Assembly (NCBI RefSeq): GCF_964188315.1
Contig: NC_135662.1
Coordinates: 7,440,001-7,504,000 of the forward strand
Source: Podarcis muralis
Taxonomy: Eukaryota
Direction of reading: 5' to 3'
DNA length: 64,000 nucleotides
In this document: positions 825 to 15,579 of the stretch, in pieces
Layout: the number at the start of each line of letters is the position of its first letter
Numbering within the stretch: position 1 is the first letter of the stretch
The notes under the pieces: generated by a model
The model's database searches: none
What the model was told of the DNA's origin: nothing
What the model saw: the letters and a program-made list of their open reading frames with translations, nothing else
Translations under genes and position numbers: made by a program

Positions 825-854
825 CTCGTAATCATCCATCATGGGATAGTCCAT
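825..854 (-). CDS. Putative first coding mini-exon (MDYPMMDDYE) of an MRGPR paralogue lying left of the window
   Basis: Reads ATG GAC TAT CCC ATG ATG GAT GAT TAC GAG|gtaagc. The exon and donor are conserved with 7627-7644 inside a duplicated block. Confidence 0.5.
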
Positions 855-2570: not shown

Positions 2571-4076
2571 TATTACAATCTAAAATCTCTGGCTGAGTCT
2601 TTTATCTGGATAATGACACTTGCGGTTTTTTGTGTTATGATAATGGCCCAGCCACTTGAAATTCTGCTGCTCCCTGCACTGATGTCGCTTAGATATAAGC
2701 TAAAAACAGATTTTTCCATAGACTTTTGGAGATAGTGGTTAACATTCAGCAGCCCTGGGTTTGATATACTTACAGCATCATTCTAATCCAAGGCCTGTTA
2801 GAAGTAGCAAATTTGGAATAGATGGACTTTAGGCTACAGCAACATAGCTCAACGTGGCTCTGCTCCTGGTCCGGCCAGAGGTCCACTGCACTGTAAGATC
2901 TGACAAATCTTGCCATATAGGCTGTTAGCGATATGCAGGGTAGCCTGAAAACAGCTTGCTCCAGTGAGTATTAGGGAGTCATTCATCCACAAACAGGGAG
3001 AAGATTCCAGAACAGTTGCATATAAGTGGGAGAGGCACTCTGAGCATGCAAAGCTTCAGCTGGAAGTGCCAATAAAAGGAGAACTAGAAGACTGACCAAA
3101 CTGCTGCTTCATGACTGCCGATAGACTGTGTCTGCCTCCATCATTGCTTAAAAGAAAGAAGGACTGAAACTTAAGTATGTCATTACAGCTATTGCTATAA
3201 TGATTGTGAATAGTGCTACTGTGAAGTGTTTATGTCCAGTCAAGAAATAATTCACTTGACTGAGTGTTATGGTGTCTGTGTTTCTACTCAAAGTGTAGTT
3301 TCAGTTGCTGACTACTGCTAAATGGTTGGAAGCTGATAACAAGCTGCCTACACATGAGTATACCCATGCAGTGAAAATGTGATGGACTGTGACCTTCAAT
3401 AGTGAGTTGTTGTGTGCTGTTCAGAAAGGACCGGAGTCAGATGCAAAGTACAATAAAATTGAAAGATTTATTTAAATTGCAGCTGAGGAATGATTAAGAT
3501 AAAACACTGTGGTATAAGAATGAAAAGAATACATAAATGGAATGCAAGTGAGCAATGGAGAAATGAAAAAGAACAACAGAGAAACGAAAAAGAACAATAT
3601 AAGATACATGTAATTATTATAATTATTTCATTCTGCATTAAATTAGTATACGACCCTATACCTTTAGATATCAAGGCGGTTCACAGCCACTGCAGTCAGC
3701 GTGAGCAAGGGACTGTGGTCATGTCCCACTGCTGTCTAGCTTGGAGATGTGTGCTTTGTCCAGTCTACTTGTGTACTTTCTGAAAGGATGAAACGCCAAT
3801 CAACATTATGGCATGGGGAGGTGGTGGGGAGAAAATCTTTAGCCCAACCCTTCAAAAAATATAGGGGTGAAGAAGACCTGACCTTCTCTCCAAGGCCCAT
3901 CTCCACAGTCTTACTCTATCCACAGCAAATGTTACAATACAAAACTCCTAGTTTAAATTTCCTATGTTGGACATGAGATAGAAAGGCATTAAAAGAAGTC
4001 TTCCACGCCAAAGACTACCCTCTGTACATTATTGTGCTTATGATAATAAAGAATTGGCCAGTCCTGCCTTAAGGCA

Positions 4077-4968
4077 TTAAGTTGCTATCATAACCGAGTT
4101 TTCAGTTTTGGATGCTGATTCTTCCTCATCCTTGAAAATCCTCTGGAGTGCAGCTTTCATGGAGACCCTGGACTGGCCCTTTTTCTGTCTCCTCCCAACT
4201 AGGAAATAGATCAGCGGGTTGACACTACTATTCAGAGAGGCACACACAAAACCAACTTCCAATAGAATCATATTCTTCTCATTAAAATAGATGGCAGTGT
4301 AAATGGCATTTAGTGGGAAAGCAAAGATGAGGAAGAAAAGAAGTGCAAGCAAAATGGTGGTGAGCAGCTTCCCGCGTTGATTCTGCTCTGATTTGCAACA
4401 GACTTTGAGGGCCAGTATCAGAGTGGAGGTGACCATCAGAGGAGTGCAAATGAGGGCGTTTACAATAAGCTGGTACACTAAGTTAGAGTCTGGAAAGCTC
4501 TGAGTCAGTAGGAGAGTAAGGTGAATGCCTGAGAGCAGGAAAGAGAGGGTCCATATCAGGGCACAGATAATGGTGGATAAACGTGCCGGCCGGTGGCATC
4601 GATGCCAAAGTGGGAAGAGGACAGCCACAGACCTGTCGATGCTGATGGCGGTCAGTAGAAACTGGCCCGCAGAATACGTGAAGAAAAATAGTTCAAATAA
4701 TACTTTTCTAATCAAAACAGCAACATGGGATTTCTCATAGAAAGTTACAACAGGCAAAATAATAGTCAGGAGAACTGTAAGGACACCAAAGTCAGCGATG
4801 GAGAGGTTCAGGATGTAGGTGGTGAAAGGATTCCTCTTAATGTGGAAGCCCAGAAGCCGGATGACCATTCCATTCCCCAGGAAGCCAAAGATGCAGATGA
4901 TGATAATTATGCTGTTGGCAATGCTTTGGATTACATTTCTATCACGTATTTCCTCAAAATATAATTCC
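4077..4968 (-). CDS. MAS/MRGPR-like GPCR 1, main coding exon (predicted 320 aa with exons 6597-6649 and 7627-7644)
   Basis: 7TM motifs FLGNG, KRNPFTTYILNLSIADF, AISIDRS, PLM, FPLN, NSSVNPLIYF. The frame is open upstream of the tracked ORF to the acceptor ccttttatctctttcag|G at 4969-4970. An in-frame TGA lies just upstream and there is no ATG before TM1. Confidence 0.9.
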
Positions 4969-5282
4969 CTGAAAGAGATAAAAGGATCTCAGTACCTGAT
5001 ATGATGTCTAGGTTCACCTTCATTAACTCTAAAGTCAGCATGACCCAATCAGTGATCAATCTAAGCAGCAAAGAGATAATACCACTTTCTTCTTGTCTAG
5101 ATCAATACCTGTGTAGCTATGGCAGTACACATTTTCCTGGAATCTTCAAAGTAAACGGTTTGGTAGCTTTTCCATTTTTACAACTATTGAGTAAATATTG
5201 ACACAAAGTAGGTGAAATGTTGAGGTTCAATAGCAAATTAGGAAATAGCTAACACTATTCTAGACTGCATCAACGGAAGTAT

Positions 5283-5808
5283 AGTGTCCAGATTGAGGGA
5301 AGTAATAGTACCACTCTATTCTGTCTTGGTCGGACCACACCTGGAATACTGTGTCCAATTTTGGGCACCCCAATTTATGAAGGATTTTGACAGGCTGGAA
5401 CGTGCAGAGGAGGGCAACCAAGATGATCAAGGATCGGGAAACCAAGCCTTATGAGGAGTAGTTGAAGGTATGTTTAGCCTGGAAAAGAGGAGACTGAAAG
5501 GAGATATGATAGCCAGCTTCAAATATCTTAAGGGCTGTGACATGGAAGGGAGTAGGACTCAAACCAATGGCTTCAAGTTGAAGGAGATTCTGACTAAACA
5601 TTCAAAAAAAGCTTTCTGACAGAGCTGTTCGACAGTGGAACAGACTCCTTCAGGAGATTATGGACTCCCCTTCATTGGAGGCTTTTAGGCAGAGGTTGTA
5701 TGGCCATCTGTCATGGATGCTTTAGCTGAGGTTCCCGCATTGCCGGGAGTTGGACTAGATGACCCTTGGGGTCCTTCCAACTCTAAAATTCTATGAATCT
5801 ATGATTAT
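5283..5808 (+). mobile_element. CR1 LINE 3' fragment, degenerate
   Basis: gaccacacctggaatactgtgtccaattttgggc ([11 protein letters not shown]) through to a (ttctatga) tail. Confidence 0.85.
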
Positions 5809-6596
5809 GTGTTAGGAAATGATTTTCAGAAAAGGGGAAGTACTTCCCTGTGGTCTTCCCCTCCATTTTTAGTAACAACGGCCCCAAACATTTTCTTTAA
5901 TCCAGGAAATTTTAAATAAAGGTAAGGGGAGTGAGTCTATCAGTGGTATTTATTCCCCTCCACTTTTTCTGACAAAGGGCTAAACCTTTTTCTTTAACCC
6001 AGGATTGTTGCATCAAGCTGAGATTGTTGCTATGATGGTTTTGCTAATCGCAGAACTGGAGATGGGGGATAGATTTGAATTTCTTTGCATTTTAATTAGA
6101 AACTATCTAATTTGAACTTCCTGAAGCAATACACAAAACAACAGCACATTTTTTTCTTTGAAATTCACACTTATCTGCATTTTGTGATGCAGTTCTCCAG
6201 CCAAGAAATTCCTACAAAAATGCATGTATTATGGGAAAACTGCACACAATATTCAAAACTGCACACAATTCAAAACTGCACACAAAATATATTAATATAT
6301 TTCTTTTAACAAATGTAACTTTCTTCTAAGTTACATTAAAATATTTTTTAAAATACATGAGGAAATCATTTTTTAAAAAAATCAAAACTCTGCAGAACAG
6401 GAAACATGAGAAATTGAGAGAATCCAAAATGGAAATCTCTGGCTATTGTTATTAAAACTCTATAAGATATTGTTCTGCATTAATCACTTATGCTTTGTCA
6501 CAGCTACATTCACTGTATCCATTCACTTCACTTTAAGTGAAGTGAATGGATACAGTGCTTATCCTGAACATGAAATTATTTTAAAAATGCACTTAC

Positions 6597-6649
6597 CCCA
6601 GTAAATCTACACCTTCTTTATACTGAATGCTAGAAACATTTTCTGATAT
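6597..6649 (-). CDS. Predicted internal 53-nt exon of GPCR 1 (ISENVSSIQYKEGVDLLG)
   Basis: Flanked by ttttatttag|ATA and GG|gtaagt. Phase 0 in and phase 2 out, matching both neighbouring exons. Encodes an N-V-S sequon. Confidence 0.6.
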
Positions 6650-6989
6650 CTAAATAAAATCACAATTACAACCCAGTTACAGAGAGTACTTTAGGTTTAA
6701 GAGAATAGATGTTAATAACAACTGACCAAATAAGCAAAGAGGGGAAGGGGAGGGAGGATAATGCAAAAACAAAGTAGTTTAATTATAAAAAAATACTTTG
6801 CAATTTCACAAATCAAATATCATTTTTCAACAAATAACATTGCTGAACATTGTATAACAGCATGGTGTATGTATGATGAATTTAAGATGAACTTCACAGA
6901 TTGGAGAACCAACAAATGAATTGGAATAGGTACCAATGTCAGGCAGAAACAACCAACTGCATAAATATAAGACGGATAGCACCTGACTT

Positions 6990-7310
6990 GCCAGTAGTAC
7001 ATGCGAAAAGGATCTAGGGGTCTTAGTAGACCAGGTTTCCTCAACCTCAGCCCTCCAGATGTTTTTGGCATACAACTCCCATGATCCCTAGATAACAGGA
7101 CCAGTGGTCAGGGATTATGGGAACTGTAGTCTCAAAACATCTGGAGGGTTGATGTTGAGGAAGCCTGTAGTAGACCAAAAACTTTACCTTGGTCTGATCA
7201 AACATGGAGTCCTGTGTCCAGTTCTGGGCACCTGAAGACTGAGAGGAGAGAGAGAGGAGAACAGATTACCCTCAGGGTCCTTTCCAACTCTAAAACTCTT
7301 TGATTCTATG
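6990..7310 (+). mobile_element. CR1 fragment, internally deleted, hosting a hAT MITE
   Basis: gaaaaggatctaggggtcttagtagacc, tgtgtccagttctgggcacc, and a ttccaactctaaaactctttgattctatg tail. Confidence 0.7.
7032..7167. mobile_element. hAT-type MITE (136 bp)
   Basis: Long imperfect TIRs cagg(t/c)ttcctcaac..ccctccagatgtttt. Perfect 8-bp TSD TAGTAGAC at 7024-7031 and 7168-7175. Confidence 0.9.
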
Positions 7311-7626
7311 TATCTAGAAATACATATTTCTATTACACATTAGCTTTGCATGCTTACCCCCTTAACCTCATTTGGTTAATGGTTATGACAAGGTTGTTTG
7401 TTTGTTTTTACAATGTTTGGTAGTGGAAATAGCTGAAATGACCAGCCAGCCTATCTGTTTTCTCTTTTACAAGCTGCTATACATCTTAAATTCAATCTCA
7501 AGCCTAACTCATGAAAGCATGCAGAGAGAAATTGCCACAGTATCAGCAAACAGGCACCTAAATCAGCATCATGTAAAAGCAAATGGGGAAGAAATTAAAA
7601 GGGAGCTTTTGTTTAAGAGTGCTTAC

Positions 7627-7644
7627 CTCGTAATCATCCATCAT
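7627..7644 (-). CDS. Predicted first coding mini-exon of GPCR 1 (MMDDYE)
   Basis: Reads ATG ATG GAT GAT TAC GAG|gtaagc, a phase 0 donor conserved in the paralogous copy at 825-842. Confidence 0.6.
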
Positions 7645-8005
7645 GGGGTAGTTGATAAAATGTACTGGTCCCCCAAGAAACACAAGCTAGAGTTATAGCC
7701 GGAACAGCCGCTGATGAGCTAGTCAGCAACAAAAGTAAGCAGAAATCAAAAGAGGAAACTGAAGCACCAGAAGATTTTGAACTAGATCTGGATAACAAAC
7801 TTCATAGGAAGTAGGCGTTAGAAAAGGAAGAAAAGAGCAGACACAGAATTCAAACCAATGGAAATGGTAGCTAGATTGTTTTAGTGGCTAATTTGATTAG
7901 ATAATTCAGATTGAGTAAGCCTATATTTTTATTCACAAATGAATTTGAGGGATGTACAAGATGGTGCATAGTAAACAGTATGAATGGCCATTTGAAACAG
8001 ATCAA

Positions 8006-8013
8006 TTGTTTGT

Positions 8014-8093
<80 letters not shown>
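8006..8093. repeat. Compound (GTT)n(ATT)n microsatellite
   Basis: Visible directly; a similar compound repeat lies at about 28445-28527. Confidence 0.95.
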
Positions 8094-8096
<3 letters not shown>

Positions 8097-8473
8097 TTAT
8101 TCAATTTATATACCACCTTCCATCAATGAGTGGTAATTGTAACCCTGGTCTCTTATGCACTGCTCCATTTGATATTCTGCCACACTTTCTGGAAACAAAA
8201 TGTACAAGTAAATAAGTTGGGGTGAGAGATGATATTTTTCCAGAGGGCTGAAACTTTAATGGGTACCTAGTTAAACATTCTGTGTGGCACCTTTCAGACT
8301 AACTAATTCAGGCCCCAGTCCTATCTGGGAGACATGCCCATGAAATTTAGTAGGTCTTACTTCTGAGTAGTATGGTTATACTGATATTAAGCTACACTAG
8401 AAATTGCACAACAGGGACCCCTCCTAAACCAAGGTTAGATATTGGTCAGTTTACTACTACTACTGCTTATAAT

Positions 8474-9110
8474 AATAATAAAAATTTGTTGGCTCCCAAC
8501 AAAATATTTGAAACACAATCAAACATCAAACATTAAAAACTTTCATATACACAGCTGTACTATGATGTCTTCTAAATGTTGTGTAGTTCTCTATCTCCTT
8601 GACATCTGATGGGGGGGGGGGGCATTCCACAGAATGGGCCCCACTATTGAGAAGGCCCTCTGCCTGGTTCCCTGTAACTTGGCTTCTTGCAGTGAGGGAA
8701 CCGCCAGAAGGCCCTCAGAGCTGGATTTCAGGGTTTGGGCTGAGCTATGGGGATGGAGACGCTCCTTCAGGTATACAGGTCAGAGGCCATTTCAGGTTTT
8801 AAAGGTCAGCACCAAAACTTTGAATTGTGCTTGGAAATATACTGGAAGCCAATGTCAATCCTTTAGGACTGGTGTTATACGGTTCTGGAGGCCACTCCCA
8901 GTCACCAGTCTATATGCTTCATTCTGGATTGCTTGTAGTTTCTGAGTCATCTTCAAAGGTAGCCCCACATAGAGGGCATTGCAATAGTCCAAGTGGGAGA
9001 TATCCAAAGCATGCACCACTCTGGCAAGACAGTCTGTGGGCAGGTAGGGTCTCAGCCAGATAGGGCTGGTAGACAGTTGCCCTGGACACAGAATTGACCT
9101 GCATCTACAT
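8474..9110 (-). mobile_element. L2 LINE 3' fragment
   Basis: Reverse complement of the family at 106-430. The degraded frame reads PYLAETLPAHRLS..YLPLGLLQCP. Confidence 0.75.
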
Positions 9111-9143
9111 GAACAGGAGGATGAACAGGGGGTCCCCCATATC

Positions 9144-9245
9144 CAGTGCTATTTTTCTAGAAAAAGAGGTGCTGGAACACACCATGAACACCTCCCCCAT
9201 TCTCTTAGAATGGCAATGGCGACCATTTGAGAGGATAGTGTTGGT
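9144..9245. mobile_element. Short MITE-like element (cagtgctatttttctagaaaaagaggtgc family)
   Basis: Reverse complement of the element at 35467-35592 and of its copies near 44572, 49833 and 58658. Confidence 0.55.
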
Positions 9246-9318
9246 TTTTCCTTAGGCAAAGGTATTTCCACAGGTGAAACATTTTCCTGACAAGTTTCCT
9301 GACCCCTCCTTTACTGAA

Positions 9319-9358
9319 AATAATAATAATGATGATAAGGATGATGATTATGATGATG

Positions 9359-9411
<53 letters not shown>
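9319..9411. repeat. (AAT)n/(GAT)n microsatellite
   Basis: Visible directly. Confidence 0.95.
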
Positions 9412-9412
<1 letters not shown>

Positions 9413-9939
9413 TCAATTTATTATTTATACCCCGCCTCTGGGCGGCTATTACTATATTTAGTTTCTGCAAGAGTTTGTGTTTTTCAACAACTTTCCTTGA
9501 TATGACATTTGTTGCACATGCTTCATTATCAACTTTAAACCACAGGAACTATCTCACCAATTACTATGCTCCTTTCTGCTCACAAAGTAGCTGTGATCAA
9601 ATCTCTTCATTTTGCTGTGAAGGGCATTTTTTTGTATCTGCATGCATTTTGGGTGTGCGTATCAGAGCACAGAATCAACAATATGGTTTATCCCCTCACC
9701 CACAAATAGCAGATACTACAATCTGAAATATCTGTCAGGATCTTTAAACCGGATAATGACGCTTATCTTTTGTGATGGTGGCAGCCCAGCTTTTGTAACT
9801 TCCTGCCACTTGAAATTCTGCTGGTGTTTCCACTCAGCAGCCATAGGTTTTATATACTTACAGCACAATTCCAATCAGAGGTCTGTTGGAATTAACAAGT
9901 TTGGAATAGGTGGACTCCAAACCTCCAGATGTCCCCACA

Positions 9940-11010
9940 GTGGTTTTATGTAGATGTTAAACAATGTGGGGGATAGGCTTGAGCCTCATGGAACCCCACA
10001 TTGTATGGGTCTGAAAAGCATTTCCCAAGCAACACCCTCTGGGAATGACCATCCAAGTAGGACTGGAACCACCGCAAAGAGGTACCACCCACTCCTAGTT
10101 CGGACAGTCACTTCAGAAAGATAACATGGTCAATGGTATCAAAAGCCACTGAGAGGTCAATAAGAATTAACAGGGACATGTTTCCCTTGTCTCTCTCTCT
10201 CTCAACAGGGGTCATCGAACAGGGCAACCAAAGTAGTTTCTGTGCCAAAACGGGGCCTAAACCTTGATTGAAATGGATCCAGAAAATCAGTTTCTTCCAA
10301 AAATGCCTGGATCTGGTCTGTGACCACTCATTCCAGAACGTTGCTCAGAAAAGGGAGATTAGCAACTGTCTGGTAGTCAGTTAGGATTTCCAAATTCAGG
10401 GAAGGTTTCTTAAGGAGTGGTTTTACCACTGCCTCATTCAAACAGGCAGGGACGACCCCCTCTCGTAAAGAGGACCAGCCAGCTGTTCCCTCCTTGCTGG
10501 TTTTTATCAGCCAAGAGGGGCAGGGGTCTAGAGTACAAGTGGTCACGCTGACTAATCCGAACACCTTGTCCACATACTTGAGCCTTACCAACTGAAACTC
10601 ATTTAACACAATAGGACTAGACTATGCTCTGGACACCCCATGAAATTCATTTGCTGTAACAGCAAAGTCTTGGTAGAGGCAAGCGATTTTATCTCCAAAA
10701 TGCTTTACAAACAAGTCACCCTCTTCCTTCCCAGTCAAGAAAACAGGTCCAGAGAGTGGCCTGCCATCTGCGTTGCACCACTGACATCTTGGGACAGCCC
10801 CATGATTGTCATGGAGGCCATGAAGTCCTGAGCTGCCCCAGAGCCAGCTGCCTTGGCATGGATGTTGGAATCTCCCAGAACCAGCAGTCTGGAAATCCTC
10901 AATGCCACCTCTGAAACCAGCTTTGTCAGCTCAAGCAGGGAGACTGCTGGGCAGCGAGGCGGGTGGTAAACCAGCAGAAGTCCTAATCTATCCCGATTGT
11001 CCAATGCCAG
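9940..11010 (-). mobile_element. Old L2 ORF2 remnant (endonuclease and pre-RT parts), internally deleted
   Basis: LLLVYHPP..LVLGDSNIH..AGHSLDL (APE domain) and LDPCPSWLIK..AVVKPLLKKPSL..VANLPFLSNVLE. Confidence 0.85.
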
Positions 11011-11159
11011 GAACACACACTCTGTATGATAAAGACATACAAACTCTGAAATATAAGAATGTAGTAATGAAATAAAACTGAGAAATAAAGAAATGCATTC
11101 TATATTTATATAGAAAATGCATTCTGGTATGCATTCTTTATTTATATAGAAAATGCATT

Positions 11160-11579
11160 CTGGTATGTCCCACAGAGAAACTTACGGTCTTCAAATAAAA
11201 ACATCTTGAAGGTCCCAGGCCACAGAGAGGTTAGGCTGGCCTCAACTAGAGCCAGGGCTTTTTCGGCTGTGGCTCCGATCTGGTGGAACACTCTGTCACA
11301 AGAGACTAGGGCCCTGCGGGACTTGACATCTTTCCGCAGGGCCTGCAAGACAGAGCTGTTCCACCAGGCCTTTGGCCAGGGCACAGCCTGACTCCCTCCT
11401 TCGGCAATCTGTGAGGAGCTCTGGCCGAATGGTTGCCAGTGGTTTGCTTTGAATTAATTTTATAATGAATGATTTTAGAGTGTTGTGTTGTGTTGTGTTG
11501 TGTTGTACTGTTGTACTGTTTTATTGTTGTTAGCCGCCCTGAGCCCAGCTTCGGCTGGGGAGGGCGGGATATAAATAAA

Positions 11580-11628
<49 letters not shown>
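11160..11628 (+). mobile_element. Young L2 3' fragment
   Basis: Very similar to 30642-31072 (KVPG.REVRLASTRARAFS..ACKTELFHQAFGQG), with a (TTA)n tail. Confidence 0.9.
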
Positions 11629-11629
<1 letters not shown>

Positions 11630-12298
11630 CCTAGGCTGGCACATTATGGAAGCTGTTGATGTGTATTTCTGCTCTTGCCACATTGCAAAAAAGAAAACGT
11701 TGGTTTTGCTTCTTGTGTTACTTCCCTTATCTTATATCAGCAGATTTCATATCAGTGTATTATTCAAGGCAACTGCTGTCCTCTTCTTAGAATGCAATAA
11801 GGGGATACCAAGAACTGCTGTAATAGGGAAGTGCTTCAGTTTCTTCGGAAAGTGTTTTTGGCTTGTCATCAACTGGGCCAATAGTTGCTCCTCAGCACCC
11901 ATTTTTTGTTTCAGGGAAATAAGTCACTTTGACCAAGATGGTGCTTTCCTGGCTTCCTCAGAGGTTACACAAAGGATACTGGTGAATGTGTGCTGGGAGA
12001 ACGGAGGTTAGCGACTGACACGGAAGAAGGGATCGTTGATCTGGGGGTCCCTGTAACAGCCAGGAGACGAGAGTCAGAAGCAGGTGAAGCTGCAGGTTTG
12101 GAGAGTGAAAAACAGGTGCAGAAGGAGTGAGAGATAGGTTAGGCTGGTGTAGAGTCAAAGCCTTCCACATCTTAGCTAAGAGATGTAGGGCTGAGGGGCA
12201 TGTTGATAAATTGTAAGTGTACTTTTGACAATAAAGAGTTAATTCCTCATTCTGGACATTCTTGACTGACAAATCCACACTTGACCTGAAGCTCACAG

Positions 12299-12420
12299 GG
12301 TAACCTTGGGCCAGTCTTTGTCAAACAGGGTTGTTGTGAGGTTCAAATGAGGAGAGGGGAAACCATGTACACCACCTTGAGCTCTTTGGAAAATAAACAA
12401 ATAAATGATAAGTAAATAAA
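12299..12420 (+). mobile_element. Degraded CORE-type SINE fragment
   Basis: ggtaaccttgggccagtc..gggttgttgtgagg..accaccttgagct resembles the body of the SINE at 35135-35385. Confidence 0.5.
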
Positions 12421-13607
12421 TCCAGGACTGGGGGACATACTCTCTGTTTAGTAACCAGATAGCAGCTTCATGCTCTGCCGTATTATTACTGTACTTACCA
12501 GATGCCCACCACATCACATTATGAGGAGGCAATGGATTTCCTTCCATGTTGGGATATCTAAAATAAAATAACTGCTATATATTACCAAAATAATTTTAAA
12601 TGCTGTTACTTAGTTGTCAAAGTGGAAAAGATTGAAAAAGACGTTCACTAGAGCTGTGCACAGCCCAATATATCTGGTCTATGACATTGATCCAGGGGTC
12701 ACAAACGAGGGTGGCCCACTGGCTTGTAGTGGCTCCCAAGATGTCACGAAGAACTTTCCCAAGCTGGTGAGCCAGAATCCTTCAAGCAGAACTACCCATG
12801 TACCCCTCTGCCACTCAACTGTGGTCCCCCACTTTCTTTTGCAAATGAACTACATCAGCTTGAGACATTCACATCCCTGTGAGAAACTGCTGATCAGCCA
12901 TCTTTAGACATACAGTATGTGGAGGAGACACCAAGAAGACACCTGCAAGAAGTTTAGGGCTGCATCCATTCCTCTTCGTCCGTGTTAAACAGTTTTCCAA
13001 CATTATGTGAGATGAAGGATTTTGTTCATTGGTACTCAAGATAGCTAATTTAGGGTGAGATTCTTGACAAAGGCATTATTGAGAATCATGAGTCATCAAG
13101 TCTCAGAGGATGAACCAGACAACTACTCTGCAATGTAACTAGGAGAAATCTATTTATTGATTACAGTTATTCTTTGTTTTCATGTTGCCATGCTCAGGCT
13201 GGTCAATGGGGTCAGAGATACACAAGAAACCTAAAGATATGCATGCAATATTACATAAATTATAAGAAGCAACATAAAGGAAAAAGAACTCAATGAAAGC
13301 CAGTAAGTCGGATGGAGGTCCCTTCTTTCCTGAGTTTTCAAGGTGATGTCCTAAGGCAGCAACATCAGTGGGTACTAGAGGAAAGGAGGATGGGCTCTGT
13401 CTTTGTTTTGGATTCTTCTCTGTCCTTTGATCTTGATAATTAGTCAGCCATATTCCTTTTCTTTGCACAGTAAGGCAAAAAACATTCCATTCTTTTTCAG
13501 TAACAATTCCGTTTACAGTCTCTCTGCTCATTGCCTACAGGGTATATGGTGATCTTCTGCTTTATGAATTTCCTTGGTGCGCCAGTCTATTCATTCTGTT
13601 ATTCCTT

Positions 13608-14130
13608 TTTTTTTTTATAAAATATTTATTAAAGATTTCAGACATTTATAATCACCAAACACATATAAAACCATCACCATAATACAATAAACAAAGAAAA
13701 ACACAAAAGAATAAAAAGAATAACACATAATACAAAAAACATACAACAACAAAATCAAATAGTTCATAACCATATTTTCTTTGCTTTTGGACTTCCTCAC
13801 ATCTCTCGTTCCTGTGTTCCCAATTCATAAAATTTTAAACAGCAATTTATCACCTTGTTTCAAATCTTATTTTGTGACTTTCCAATATTATGTCTCTAAC
13901 TTTAAATATTTTTATCATGAACTTAAATACTTAATCTAGACATGATATTAATCTGAAATTTATCTTTTTCTCAAATTTCACTTATTTTCATAGTCCCTTC
14001 AGCTAGTTTGCTGATGCCCTGTTATTTTCAGTCCTGCATCCTTCTTAACACTCATACAATTTACAATGTTTTTGTAAATAGTCCTTAAATTTCTTCCAAT
14101 CCTCTTCCACTGCTTCTTCTCCCAGGTCGC
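13608..14130 (-). mobile_element. L1-type LINE 3' fragment
   Basis: Encodes RDLGEEAVEEDWKKFKDYLQKHCKLYEC* with a polyA tail. 18-bp TSD TTCATTCTGTTATTCCTT at 13590-13607 and 14131-14148. Confidence 0.9.
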
Positions 14131-14792
14131 TTCATTCTGTTATTCCTTGGTACTCCAGCTGTCATTCACTTATCCCATCATTCACATATATGGATCCCCG
14201 ACCCCCTCAATTCTATTCACAGGATTTCCATGCTTTGCCACCAACCAGCAGAAATGTCTCATGCTTAACTGTCAGGTCCCCCATCCACACTCACTCATTC
14301 CTTGTTTCTCGGTATGTTCCTGGAAATTACCTTTTCCCTTCCATCTCTAAAAACCTCAGCTGACCACAGTTCTCCTGCTTCAAAAAACAACTCTGCTCAT
14401 TCTCCCTTGATACCTGCTAAATGTGGCACACACTATCTCAATATCTATTGTGGTGGAAAGCTTTTGGAAGCTGCATTCCAGTAGCAAGCATCCACACACA
14501 CATATACAAAAACAAGAAACACACCAGATCTCTATCACTCACTTGCAGTAAATTGGGCAATCACACAAAGTAGATTGAAAACACATTATCCTCCCCCACC
14601 CCCGATAATTCTGGGGACTTTAGTTTATTAAGGGCACTAGAAAATGTAGCTCTGTGAGTGGTAAGTTAAGTTCTCAGAATACTTGGAGGGCCATCATGTG
14701 CTTTCAATGTGGTTTCAGTGTATGGTGTGTACCGAGCCACACAGACATTGCTATTGGACCTAGAAATGGAGACCTTCTATATATCCCTGGGT

Positions 14793-15020
14793 TCATAGAC
14801 TCATAGAACTGTAAAGTTGGAAGGTACCCCAAAGGTCATCTAGTCGAGCAGGAATCTCAACTAAAGCATGCATAACAGATGACTTTCCAACCTCTGCTTA
14901 AAAGCCTCCAATGAAGGGGAGTCCATAATCTCCTGAGGGAGTCTGTTCCACTGTCATACAGCTCTTAGTGTCAGAAAGTTATTTCTGATGTTAAGTCATA
15001 ATCCCCTTTCTTCCAACTTG
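14793..15020 (-). mobile_element. CR1 3' fragment
   Basis: Reverse complement of the CR1 3' end, with a tcatagactcatagaa tail. Confidence 0.8.
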
Positions 15021-15579
15021 GTTTTCCCAGATGTGGAATTGAATAATAGGTTAATGACTCACTTAGACCTAATTTTGGGAGGGGTCAAATTAATTTTGAC
15101 AAAACTAGTGAATTCTTTTTAGAAGTCTTTTTGGGAAGGTTTTTGCATTCGTTGAGGATGCCTCTGAATAGCTGTTTCTGGGAACCTCAAGTGAGGAGAG
15201 TGCTATTAATCTCTTTAATCACAGAGAGCCAGAACTTTTGTACTTTCCCACAATCCCACCAGAGATGTCTGTAAGCACCCATGAGCTGACATCCCCTCCA
15301 TGACGGTTGATATTGCTGTTTATAGAGGAACGCTTGAAACCAATAAGCATTAGATTGGGAAAGTGGGAATAATATTAATTGATTATATAAACTTCATGCA
15401 CTGGAGAAGCAAAGGTACAGAGAAGAGGAGTGTAAGGAAGATGGCTATGCTGGTTCACGATGAGAAGCTATTTTTTTTACCAACCCCATGGATAGAAGTG
15501 AGGCCTGCCTATAAAAATCCATTGGGAAATCTAAGATTTCACACAGTAGGAACCCTGCTAAGACACCACTCATAGGCGG

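What the first reader, a model, noticed from the sequence alone, without database searches (positions are those of the whole stretch)
4077..7644. Hidden three-exon MRGPR with an acidic, Tyr-rich N-terminus built from mini-exons
The tracked ORF starts after TM1 and has an in-frame stop upstream, so it needs splicing. Joining 7644-7627 (phase 0), 6649-6597 (0 to 2) and 4968-4077 (phase 2) gives 963 nt, or 320 aa: MMDDYE-ISENVSSIQYKEGVDLLG-ELYFEEIRDRNVIQS-TM1. All junctions are GT-AG and frame-compatible, and the first exon and donor are conserved in a paralogue. MAS/MRGPR genes mostly have a single coding exon. The DDYE/ELYFEE N-terminus resembles the sulfotyrosine docking segments of chemoattractant receptors (inference).
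Basis: partly seen in the sequence, partly recalled or inferred. Interest (0 to 1): 0.75.

Follow-up and report, generated by a model that had tools for sequence, protein, structure and literature searches.

The report
Split-exon lizard MRGPR gene, mis-annotated
The transcripts seen carry one more 51-base exon born from a repeat, and the same gene layout is already in public models of sister lizards, so this is a sound re-annotation and not a new kind of receptor.

Summary
Observation confirmed, interpretation partly supported.

**What holds**
- The window comes from the Podarcis muralis MRGPR cluster.
- The ORF at 4968-4077 (minus strand) is a MAS/MRGPR 7TM core. Its first ATG (4868) lies after TM1, and an in-frame TGA sits upstream.
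- Spliced contigs from three RNA-like runs of one study use the E1 donor, both E2 sites and the E3 acceptor.

- The same contigs insert a fourth, in-frame 51-nt exon (7238-7188, SSGAQNWTQDSMFDQTK), giving 337 aa. It derives from an interspersed repeat and is Podarcis-specific.
- The direct 7627>6649 junction was not seen.
- The three-exon layout is not hidden. RefSeq models of P. muralis (older annotation), P. raffonei and Lacerta agilis have it, and a P. lilfordi model includes the 51-nt exon. Only this assembly's stored gene call is truncated, at 263 aa.
- Split coding regions are common in squamate MRGPR models.

**Other points**
- Frames and splice sites are intact in all four lacertids, and E3 dN/dS is 0.25-0.41.
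- E2 changes faster than its introns.
- Tyrosine sulfation is untested.
- The scan holds another note on this same stretch, without a follow-up.

Interest is low to moderate.

The parts
7645..7726 (-). 5' UTR part of exon 1 (minimum extent)
   Evidence: The spliced contig X3 record 21 reaches 7726. Contig depth falls to 0 beyond 7842. There is no upstream ATG, and an in-frame stop lies 17 codons before the ATG.
7627..7644 (-). Coding mini-exon E1 (MMDDYE), donor GAG|GTAAGC
   Evidence: Joint 7238>7627 in X1 and X3 (and 7240>7630 in X2). Conserved in gene B, P. raffonei, P. lilfordi and L. agilis.
7188..7238 (-). Extra in-frame 51-nt exon (SSGAQNWTQDSMFDQTK, with NWT sequon), derived from an interspersed repeat.
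   Evidence: Joints 6649>7188 and 7238>7627 with CT..AC ends on the + strand (GT..AG on the gene strand) in X1, X2 and X3. Annotated in P. lilfordi CAI5778948.1. In L. agilis the repeat is undeleted and the donor is GC.
6597..6649 (-). Coding mini-exon E2 (ISENVSSIQYKEGVDLLG-, NVS sequon), phase 0 to 2
   Evidence: joint 6649>7188; the 4969>6608 joint fits a 6597|4968 junction on a VFYLG allele. Orthologous exons are in frame. The donor is shared with gene B's 26-nt E2.
4077..4968 (-). Main coding exon E3: end of the N-terminal tail (ELYFEEIRDRNVIQS), TM1-TM7, C-tail and stop TAA at 4079-4077
   Evidence: Pfam 7tm_1 at 1e-20. MAS1 at 3.4e-48. Contig cover in all four runs. dN/dS 0.25-0.41.
3969..4076 (-). 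3' UTR (minimum extent)
   Evidence: Contigs X1 record 1 (3969-4149) and X3 record 17 (3734-4375).
825..854 (-). Coding exon 1 of paralogue gene B (MDYPMMDDYE). The rest of the gene lies left of the window.
   Evidence: L001 14015-14044.
6511..6557 (.). Perfect palindrome with 23-nt arms in intron 2, 40 nt after the E2 donor

Best explanation
This is a functional-looking MAS/MRGPR-type receptor gene of the wall lizard. Its extracellular N-terminal tail is spliced together from mini-exons onto one large exon that holds all seven helices.

Exon order on the minus strand:
- E1, 7644-7627: 6 codons (MMDDYE).
- A Podarcis-specific 51-nt exon, 7238-7188: 17 codons taken from an interspersed repeat.
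- E2, 6649-6597: 53 nt.
- E3, 4968-4077.

With the 51-nt exon the product is 337 aa. Both are in frame, so the 51-nt exon probably acts as a cassette exon (inferred).

The E1-E2-E3 layout is ancestral to this lacertid subfamily. The neighbouring paralogue B and the Lacerta orthologue share the same donor and acceptor sites.

The tail changes by exon-level events while the 7TM core is under purifying selection. These events are an acceptor shift in gene B, repeat exonization in Podarcis, a tandem duplication in Lacerta E1, and in-frame indels in E2 and at the start of E3.

The tail is acidic: 12 D/E against 4 K/R in the 55 residues before SIANS. It keeps an N-x-S sequon in E2 and has Tyr next to acidic residues (DDYE, ELYFEE). 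Its likely role is a glycosylated, possibly Tyr-sulfated, ligand-facing or trafficking segment (inferred, not shown).

The 263-aa product stored for this assembly is a truncated gene call.
For: **Anatomy.** Sequence and frames were checked. The 7TM identity rests.

**Splicing.**
- Contig X3 record 21 (296 nt) runs 4877-4969 / E2 / 7188-7238 / 7627-7726.
- The E2/51-nt-exon joint is in X1, X2 and X3; the 51-nt-exon/E1 joint is in X1 and X3, and in X2 as the shifted 7240>7630. Both have GT..AG ends on the gene strand.
- Exon contigs have depth 10-120, against 2-6 for intron contigs.

**Public models.**
- P0130: MDDYE|ISENVSSIQYKEGVFYLG|ELYFEE...
- P0124: P. raffonei.
- P0002: L. agilis.
- P0127: P. 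lilfordi, includes SSGAQNWTQDSMLHQTK.

**Orthologous loci.**
- The loci are collinear.
- All E1, E2 and E3 splice sites are conserved. Length changes are multiples of three: +12 nt in L. agilis E2 and +27 nt in its E1.
- Gene B shares the E2 donor and the E3 acceptor.

**Selection.** E3 dN/dS is 0.25 against P. raffonei and 0.41 against L. agilis.

**Origin of the 51-nt exon.** In L. agilis the repeat keeps about 128 nt more and has a GC donor. Podarcis has the deletion and a GT donor. The flank just 5' of the exon (7329-7259) has related copies in the window at 486-557 and 5757-5803.
Against: - The runs are not on record as RNA. That they are RNA is inferred from contig totals and from the spliced joints.
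- The junctions come from one study (P1). The run from study P2 (X5) covered E3 but gave no joint.
- The contigs differ from the window by about 2% in E3 and by 8 in 100 in the 5' UTR. Their E2 ends VFYLG, not VDLLG. They therefore come from other alleles, or possibly from extra A-type copies, and not from this exact haplotype.
- No second A-type copy lies between window positions -13132 and +14868.
- Skipping of the 51-nt exon was not observed here.
- The stored annotation for this assembly gives only 263 aa.
- Sulfation, glycosylation and ligand binding are untested.
Confidence: 0.82

Rival explanations
1. The reader's exact three-exon mRNA (E1 joined directly to E2, 320 aa) is the main product, and the 51-nt exon is a minor or aberrant inclusion.
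For: RefSeq models for P. raffonei (P0124) and the older P. muralis annotation (P0130) skip the 51-nt exon. L. agilis cannot make that exon, yet keeps E1-E2-E3. Both forms are in frame.
Against: Contigs from three samples carry the 51-nt exon, and none shows the 7627>6649 junction. Contigs keep the dominant path, so inclusion is at least a major form in those samples. The P. lilfordi model includes the exon.
Confidence: 0.3
2. This copy is a decaying or non-functional allele. The upstream exons are then only untranslated leader, and the product, if any, is the 263-aa six-helix fragment that starts at ATG 4868.
For: The gene call stored for this assembly is 263 aa. The window's E2 carries a private cluster of changes (VDLL in place of VFYL). 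The family shows copy-number differences between assemblies.
Against: The reading frame is open from the E1 ATG through all exons in four species, despite many substitutions and indels, all of them multiples of three. All splice sites are canonical. E3 dN/dS is 0.25-0.41. Window-like E3 contigs are present at exon-level depth in X3. A receptor without TM1 would have the wrong topology.
Confidence: 0.1
3. The spliced contigs come from a different A-type paralogue that is absent from this assembly's neighbourhood, so they say nothing about the window's own copy.
For: Exon contigs differ from the window by about 2%, while intron contigs differ by about 0.5%. Their amino-acid differences match P0130 at six sites in E3. 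The older annotation lists more genes of this subfamily than are seen here.
Against: The contigs carry A-specific E2, the 51-nt exon and the ELYFEE start of E3. No second copy of these exists between -13132 and +14868. X3 links a window-like E3 start (reference base at 4890) to the spliced upstream exons. The AA plus S haplotype seen in X1 and X2 equals the P. lilfordi orthologue of gene A. Even if the contigs are from a paralogue, the window copy has the same sites intact.
Confidence: 0.2

Closest known systems
Public gene models of the same gene or its orthologues: XP_028594319.1 (P. muralis, older annotation), XP_053251685.1 (P. raffonei), XP_033012039.1 (Lacerta agilis), CAI5778948.1 (P. 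lilfordi)
   Same: They have the same E1, E2 and E3 exons and splice sites. The P. lilfordi model also has the 51-nt exon.
   Different: The window haplotype has MMDDYE with two ATGs, a private VDLL variant in E2, and about 14 amino-acid differences from XP_028594319.1. Its own stored annotation is truncated to 263 aa.
Mammalian MAS1 / MRGPRD, E, X1, X2, X4 (solved structures)
   Same: The 7TM core is shared: MAS1 E=3.4e-48 and MRGPRD 7e-42. TM6 reads FAFP, like MAS1 FAMP, with no CWxP Trp. The NPxxY-type motif is NPLIY.
   Different: Mammalian members have the coding region in one exon (own knowledge: Dong et al. 2001; Bader et al. 2014). Here the tail is split over 3-4 exons, and other squamate models are split too.
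Sulfotyrosine-bearing N-termini of chemoattractant receptors (CCR5, CXCR4, C5aR1)
   Same: The extracellular tail is acidic, with Tyr next to Asp/Glu close to the N-terminus (DDYE, ELYFEE). Some of those receptor genes also put the first few codons on a separate exon (own knowledge; a lead only).
   Different: There is no evidence of sulfation here. The Tyr of E1 is lost in MGDCE paralogues. No paper in the library links Tyr sulfation to MRGPR tails.
Exonization of transposable-element fragments (for example Alu exons in primates)
   Same: A repeat fragment gained a GT donor, and an internal deletion brought an acceptor next to it. It is now spliced in as an in-frame cassette.
   Different: The host is a receptor's N-terminal tail in lizards. 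The repeat family was not identified here.

Membership tests
MAS / MAS-related GPCR (MRGPR) family, class A | Rhodopsin-type 7TM domain | tested here: met
   Pfam 7tm_1 at E=1e-20, covering profile positions 1-260 of 260.
MAS / MAS-related GPCR (MRGPR) family, class A | Closest characterised relatives are MAS1/MRGPR and not other class A groups | tested here: met
   Against solved chains: MAS1 3.4e-48, MRGPRD 7e-42, MRGPRE, X4, X1 and X2. The next group (chemerin, C3a and C5a receptors) scores only 1e-17 or weaker. Database names are MRGPRH-like or Mas-like.
MAS / MAS-related GPCR (MRGPR) family, class A | Family-typical TM6 without the CWxP tryptophan, plus a TM7 NPxxY-type motif | tested here: met
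   The alignment to MAS1 shows LIFAFPLN against LIFAMPMR, and NPLIYF against NPFIYF.
MAS / MAS-related GPCR (MRGPR) family, class A | Coding region on one exon (typical of mammalian members; not a defining feature) | tested here: not met
   There are four coding exons in the contigs. Gene B, Anolis MRGPRH and L. agilis P0069 are also split.
Receptors with sulfotyrosine N-terminal docking segments | Tyr flanked by acidic residues in the extracellular tail | tested here: met
   The motifs are MMDDYE and ELYFEE. The tail has 12 D/E and 4 K/R.
Receptors with sulfotyrosine N-terminal docking segments | The motif is conserved among relatives | tested here: inconclusive
   DDY is kept in genes A and B and in P. 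raffonei and P. lilfordi, and is present twice in L. agilis. It is replaced by GDCE in paralogues P0128 and P0126.
Receptors with sulfotyrosine N-terminal docking segments | Tyr is actually O-sulfated and contributes to ligand binding | not testable with these tools
   This needs labelling or mass spectrometry and Y-to-F mutants.
Exonized repeat (cassette exon) | The exon lies inside an interspersed-repeat copy, with splice sites created secondarily | tested here: met
   L. agilis has the longer repeat with a GC donor. Podarcis has a deletion of about 128 nt and a GT donor. The flank just 5' of the exon has related copies in the window.
Exonized repeat (cassette exon) | Both inclusion and skipping occur in RNA | tested here: inconclusive
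   Inclusion was seen in three samples. Skipping appears only in RefSeq models, not in the contigs.

The most novel reading that the evidence does not exclude
Lacertid MRGPRs of this subfamily use a modular N-terminal tail encoded by mini-exons as a ligand-capture segment, like those of chemokine and anaphylatoxin receptors. The tail would carry sulfated Tyr (DDYE, ELYFEE) and N-glycans. It would be diversified under positive selection by exon-level changes: repeat exonization, acceptor shifts and fast-evolving E2. This would tune recognition of cationic peptide or protein ligands.
Probability: 0.15. Interest if true: 0.55.

Novelty: already known. Interest (0 to 1): 0.3.

Why it matters
The practical value is a corrected gene model. 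The 263-aa product stored for this assembly lacks TM1. The real product is a 7TM receptor of 320 or 337 aa, or one residue shorter if the second ATG, which has the better context, is used.

It also shows that the mammalian rule that MRGPR coding regions sit on one exon does not hold for squamates. A repeat fragment has been recruited as an in-frame exon in a receptor's outer tail within the genus Podarcis. The fast-changing E2 between near-invariant splice flanks points to the tail as a place where these receptors diverge. None of this changes what is known about the family's mechanism.

Tried and rejected
- **Donor at 7358.**
- **Read-through of the E1 donor.** It hits a stop after 27 codons, so E1 is not a longer exon.
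- **Second copy of E2 in the window.** None found.
- **P0130-like twin nearby.** I searched L001 and L002, which cover window -13132 to +14868. They hold only gene B, a truncated fragment (gene C), and MRGPR ORFs on the opposite strand.
- **Logan contig L003.** I hoped it was a spliced transcript, but it is unspliced at the E3 acceptor.
- **Papers.** Searches for lizard MRGPRs and for Tyr sulfation of MRGPRs found nothing on split N-termini or sulfation.
- **Joined model.** The joined spliced model was not sent to any search or fold tool. Exons were searched by reference, and joining was done only in a local script to check frame.
Full report
**1. What is in the sequence**

- E1 is ATGATGGATGATTACGAG (7644-7627), followed by GTAAGC.
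- E2 is 53 nt (6649-6597), between TTTAG and GTAAGT.
- E3 runs from 4968, after CTTTCAG, to TAA at 4079-4077.
- In frame with E3 there is a TGA at 4991-4989.
- The first in-frame ATG of E3 is at 4868.

E3 matches Pfam 7tm_1 at E=1e-20. Against solved structures it is closest to MAS1 (3.4e-48), then MRGPRD, E, X4, X1 and X2. E3 residues 16-290 align with MAS1 residues 34-315. TM1 therefore starts near E3 residue 16, and the ATG at residue 34 lies behind it.

A local translation of the joined exons gives 963 nt and 320 aa with no stop. That joined model was used only for this frame check. It was not sent to any search or fold tool, and all searches used single exons by reference.

**2. Where it comes from**

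Protein and locus look-ups place the window on Podarcis muralis chromosome OZ076961.1 (assembly GCA_964188315.1; window position = record position minus 7,440,000).

The window is a tandem cluster of MRGPR-like genes, all on the minus strand. The product stored for this gene in that assembly is only the 263-aa ORF from ATG 4868 (P0123).

**3. RNA-level evidence**

Four runs that hold the stretch were laid on 3000-8000. They are not on record as RNA. I take them as RNA for three reasons:
- Their contig totals are 120-160 Mb, against about 1.4-1.7 Gb for the DNA runs.
- Exon contigs have depth 10-120, against 2-6 for intron contigs.
- They contain spliced joints with GT..AG ends.

Contig X3 record 21 (296 nt) reads as follows:
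- 4877-4969;
- ten differing letters;
- 6608-6649;
- 7188-7238;
- 7627-7726.

The joint 6649>7188 occurs in X1, X2 and X3 (three samples, one study). The joint 7238>7627 occurs in X1 and X3; X2 has the same junction aligned as 7240>7630. X5, from a second study, covers E3 but shows no joint.

They also hold a fourth exon, 7238-7188 (51 nt; AG|TCT...AAG|GTAAAG). In phase 0 it reads SSGAQNWTQDSMFDQTK and keeps the frame, giving 337 aa. The predicted direct junction 7627>6649 was not seen, and neither was the donor at 7358. Contigs show presence and not absence, so skipping of the 51-nt exon remains possible.

**4. Whose transcripts are they?**

The contigs are not identical to the window.
- They differ by about 2% in E3 and by 8 in 100 in the 5' UTR.
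- The ten 'letters between' at the E2/E3 joint turn ...GTAGATTTACTGGG (VDLLG) into ...GTATTTTACCTGGG (VFYLG). The length is the same, so the junction is still 6597|4968.
- VFYLG is the sequence of the P. lilfordi orthologue and of XP_028594319.1.
- The non-synonymous differences in X1, X2 and X5 match XP_028594319.1 at six E3 sites: D160N, V179I, I184V, K192N, K231N and L236M (my reading table 3).
- X3 has window-like E3 pieces (1 difference in 177) linked to the spliced upstream exons.

No second copy of E2, the 51-nt exon or the ELYFEE-type start of E3 exists between window positions -13132 and +14868. The simplest reading is that these are other alleles of this gene in other animals. The window's VDLL would then be a private, frame-preserving variant. 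An extra A-type copy in some haplotypes cannot be excluded, because the older annotation lists more subfamily members than this assembly shows here.

**5. Comparison with relatives**

Public models already show the structure:

| Model | Species | Length | N-terminal exons |
|---|---|---|---|
| XP_028594319.1 | P. muralis (older annotation) | 319 aa | MDDYE / ISENVSSIQYKEGVFYLG / ELYFEEIHDRNVIQS |
| XP_053251685.1 | P. raffonei | 319 aa | MDDYE / ISENFSSIQYQEGVIYLG / ELYFEEIRDRN... |
| XP_033012039.1 | Lacerta agilis | 332 aa | MDDYMEYPTVDDYK / ISQNFSIIHCYNGNMGGHPYMG / EIYSEKIGDSGVIQS |
| CAI5778948.1 | P. lilfordi | 322 aa | MMDDYE / SSGAQNWTQDSMLHQTK / MSENFSSIQYKEGVFYLG / ... |

The three orthologous loci are collinear with the window gene. 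All E1, E2 and E3 splice sites are conserved. Length changes are multiples of three: +12 nt in Lacerta E2, and a tandem duplication of +27 nt in Lacerta E1.

Paralogue gene B starts in this window (exon 1 at 854-825, MDYPMMDDYE) and is XP_028594382.2. It has the same plan.
- Its 26-nt E2 (EKNISRRLW) uses the donor homologous to gene A's, with a shifted acceptor and the same phase.
- Its E3 acceptor is homologous to gene A's. Gene A has in-frame deletions of 9 and 24 nt relative to gene B.

The E1-E2-E3 plan therefore predates both the A/B duplication and the Lacerta-Podarcis split.

Split coding regions are common in squamate MRGPR models in general. Anolis MRGPRH (378 aa) spans 6743 nt, and L. 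agilis P0069 (385 aa) spans 2518 nt. The rule of one coding exon is a mammalian one (own knowledge).

**6. Origin of the 51-nt exon**

In L. agilis the homologous place holds a longer repeat copy, with about 128 nt more between the acceptor-like CAG and the exon body. The donor position there reads AAG|GCAGAA.

The three Podarcis species share the internal deletion and have AAG|GTAAA. The flank just 5' of the exon (7329-7259) has related copies elsewhere in the window, at 486-557 and 5757-5803. This is repeat exonization within the Podarcis lineage. It adds 17 residues, including an N-W-T sequon.

**7. Selection**

E3 is under purifying selection: dN/dS is 0.25 against P. raffonei and 0.41 against L. 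agilis.

E2 behaves differently.
- Against L. agilis it has 17 mismatches in 53 nt plus 12 gap columns. Intron 1b has 33 in 531 (Fisher p=1.7e-7).
- The 40 nt on either side of E2 are almost invariant (39/40 upstream, 34/36 downstream).
- Against P. raffonei it has 7/53 mismatches against 17/538 in the intron (p=0.003). About four of the 7 mismatches belong to the window's private VDLL cluster.
- The frame and the N-x-S sequon survive all of this.

This pattern fits a coding exon whose peptide is free or driven to change while its splicing signals are held fixed. The exon is too short for a formal test.

**8. Function**

The shown facts are these:
- The core is an MRGPR/MAS-type 7TM domain.
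- The tail is assembled by splicing.
- The tail is acidic, with 12 D/E and 4 K/R before TM1.
- The tail has sequons (NVS in E2, NWT in the 51-nt exon) and Tyr next to acidic residues (DDYE, ELYFEE).

The inference is that the tail is an extracellular, glycosylated segment that takes part in ligand capture or surface delivery.

It is untested, and the E1 Tyr is replaced (MGDCE) in paralogues P0128 and P0126. No paper in the library connects Tyr sulfation with MRGPR tails.

The second ATG has the better context (A at -3, G at +4). This may be why the RefSeq models start at MDDYE (inference).

**9. Verdict**

The upstream coding mini-exons are real and conserved. However, the transcripts seen have four coding exons and not three, and the layout is already present in public models of this species (older annotation) and its relatives. 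It is typical of squamate MRGPR models. The useful outcomes are a corrected model for a truncated gene call, and a documented repeat-derived exon.

Limits of this work:
- The junction evidence comes from assembled contigs of one study.
- Those contigs come from runs not recorded as RNA.
- They represent alleles that differ from the window.

Noticed in passing
window 6597-6649 with flanks 6560-6690: Mini-exon E2 diverges several times faster than the surrounding introns: 17/53 mismatches plus a 12-nt insertion against L. agilis, compared with 33/531 in intron 1b. The 40 nt on each side are almost invariant, and the frame and the N-x-S sequon are kept. This may reflect diversifying selection on the tail.
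   Followed up: partly
window 7505-7690 versus 700-890: Between paralogues A and B, a block of about 180 bp is about 97% identical while its flanks are about 76-80% identical. The block covers 45 bp before the ATG, E1, and about 115 bp of intron 1. Most of the conserved block is intron, and its start is also well kept in L. agilis. It could reflect gene conversion or a promoter-proximal or splicing control element.
   Followed up: partly
window 6511-6557: A perfect palindrome with 23-nt arms and a 1-nt spacer sits 40 nt downstream of the E2 donor. The first arm is present in P. raffonei and P. lilfordi, and the region is poorly conserved in L. agilis. Contigs of X1 and X2 fold back here.
   Followed up: partly
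window 6597-6610: The reference haplotype's E2 ends GTAGATTTACTGGG (VDLLG). The RNA-like contigs, P. lilfordi and XP_028594319.1 have GTATTTTACCTGGG (VFYLG). This is a clustered multi-base change that keeps length and frame.
   Followed up: partly
L005 about 2990-3040 (Lacerta agilis orthologue): E1 carries a tandem duplication that gives MMDDYMEYPTVDDYK. That makes three Tyr next to acidic residues, where Podarcis has one.
   Followed up: no
L006 about 8420-8530 (P. lilfordi orthologue): An assembly gap (a run of N) sits just inside E3. This probably explains why the P. lilfordi model jumps from E2 straight to IANSAF. The gap was left as it is.
   Followed up: no
L002 15408-16082, 19800-20459 (-) and 23661-23972 (-), that is window about -4550 to -13100: Left of gene B lie a truncated MRGPR ORF of the same subfamily (224 aa, ending in unrelated sequence) and MRGPR-like ORFs on the opposite strand. 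The cluster changes orientation there.
   Followed up: no
window 7700-15500: There is no counterpart here of the third subfamily gene seen in other annotations (P0128 in the older P. muralis annotation; P0005 upstream of the A orthologue in P. lilfordi). This suggests copy-number differences between assemblies or haplotypes.
   Followed up: partly
window 5325-5369: Intron 2 holds another sense-oriented copy of the repeat segment that gave the 51-nt exon. At the donor position it reads ACCAAG|ACAGAA, so it has no GT and no sign of use.
   Followed up: no
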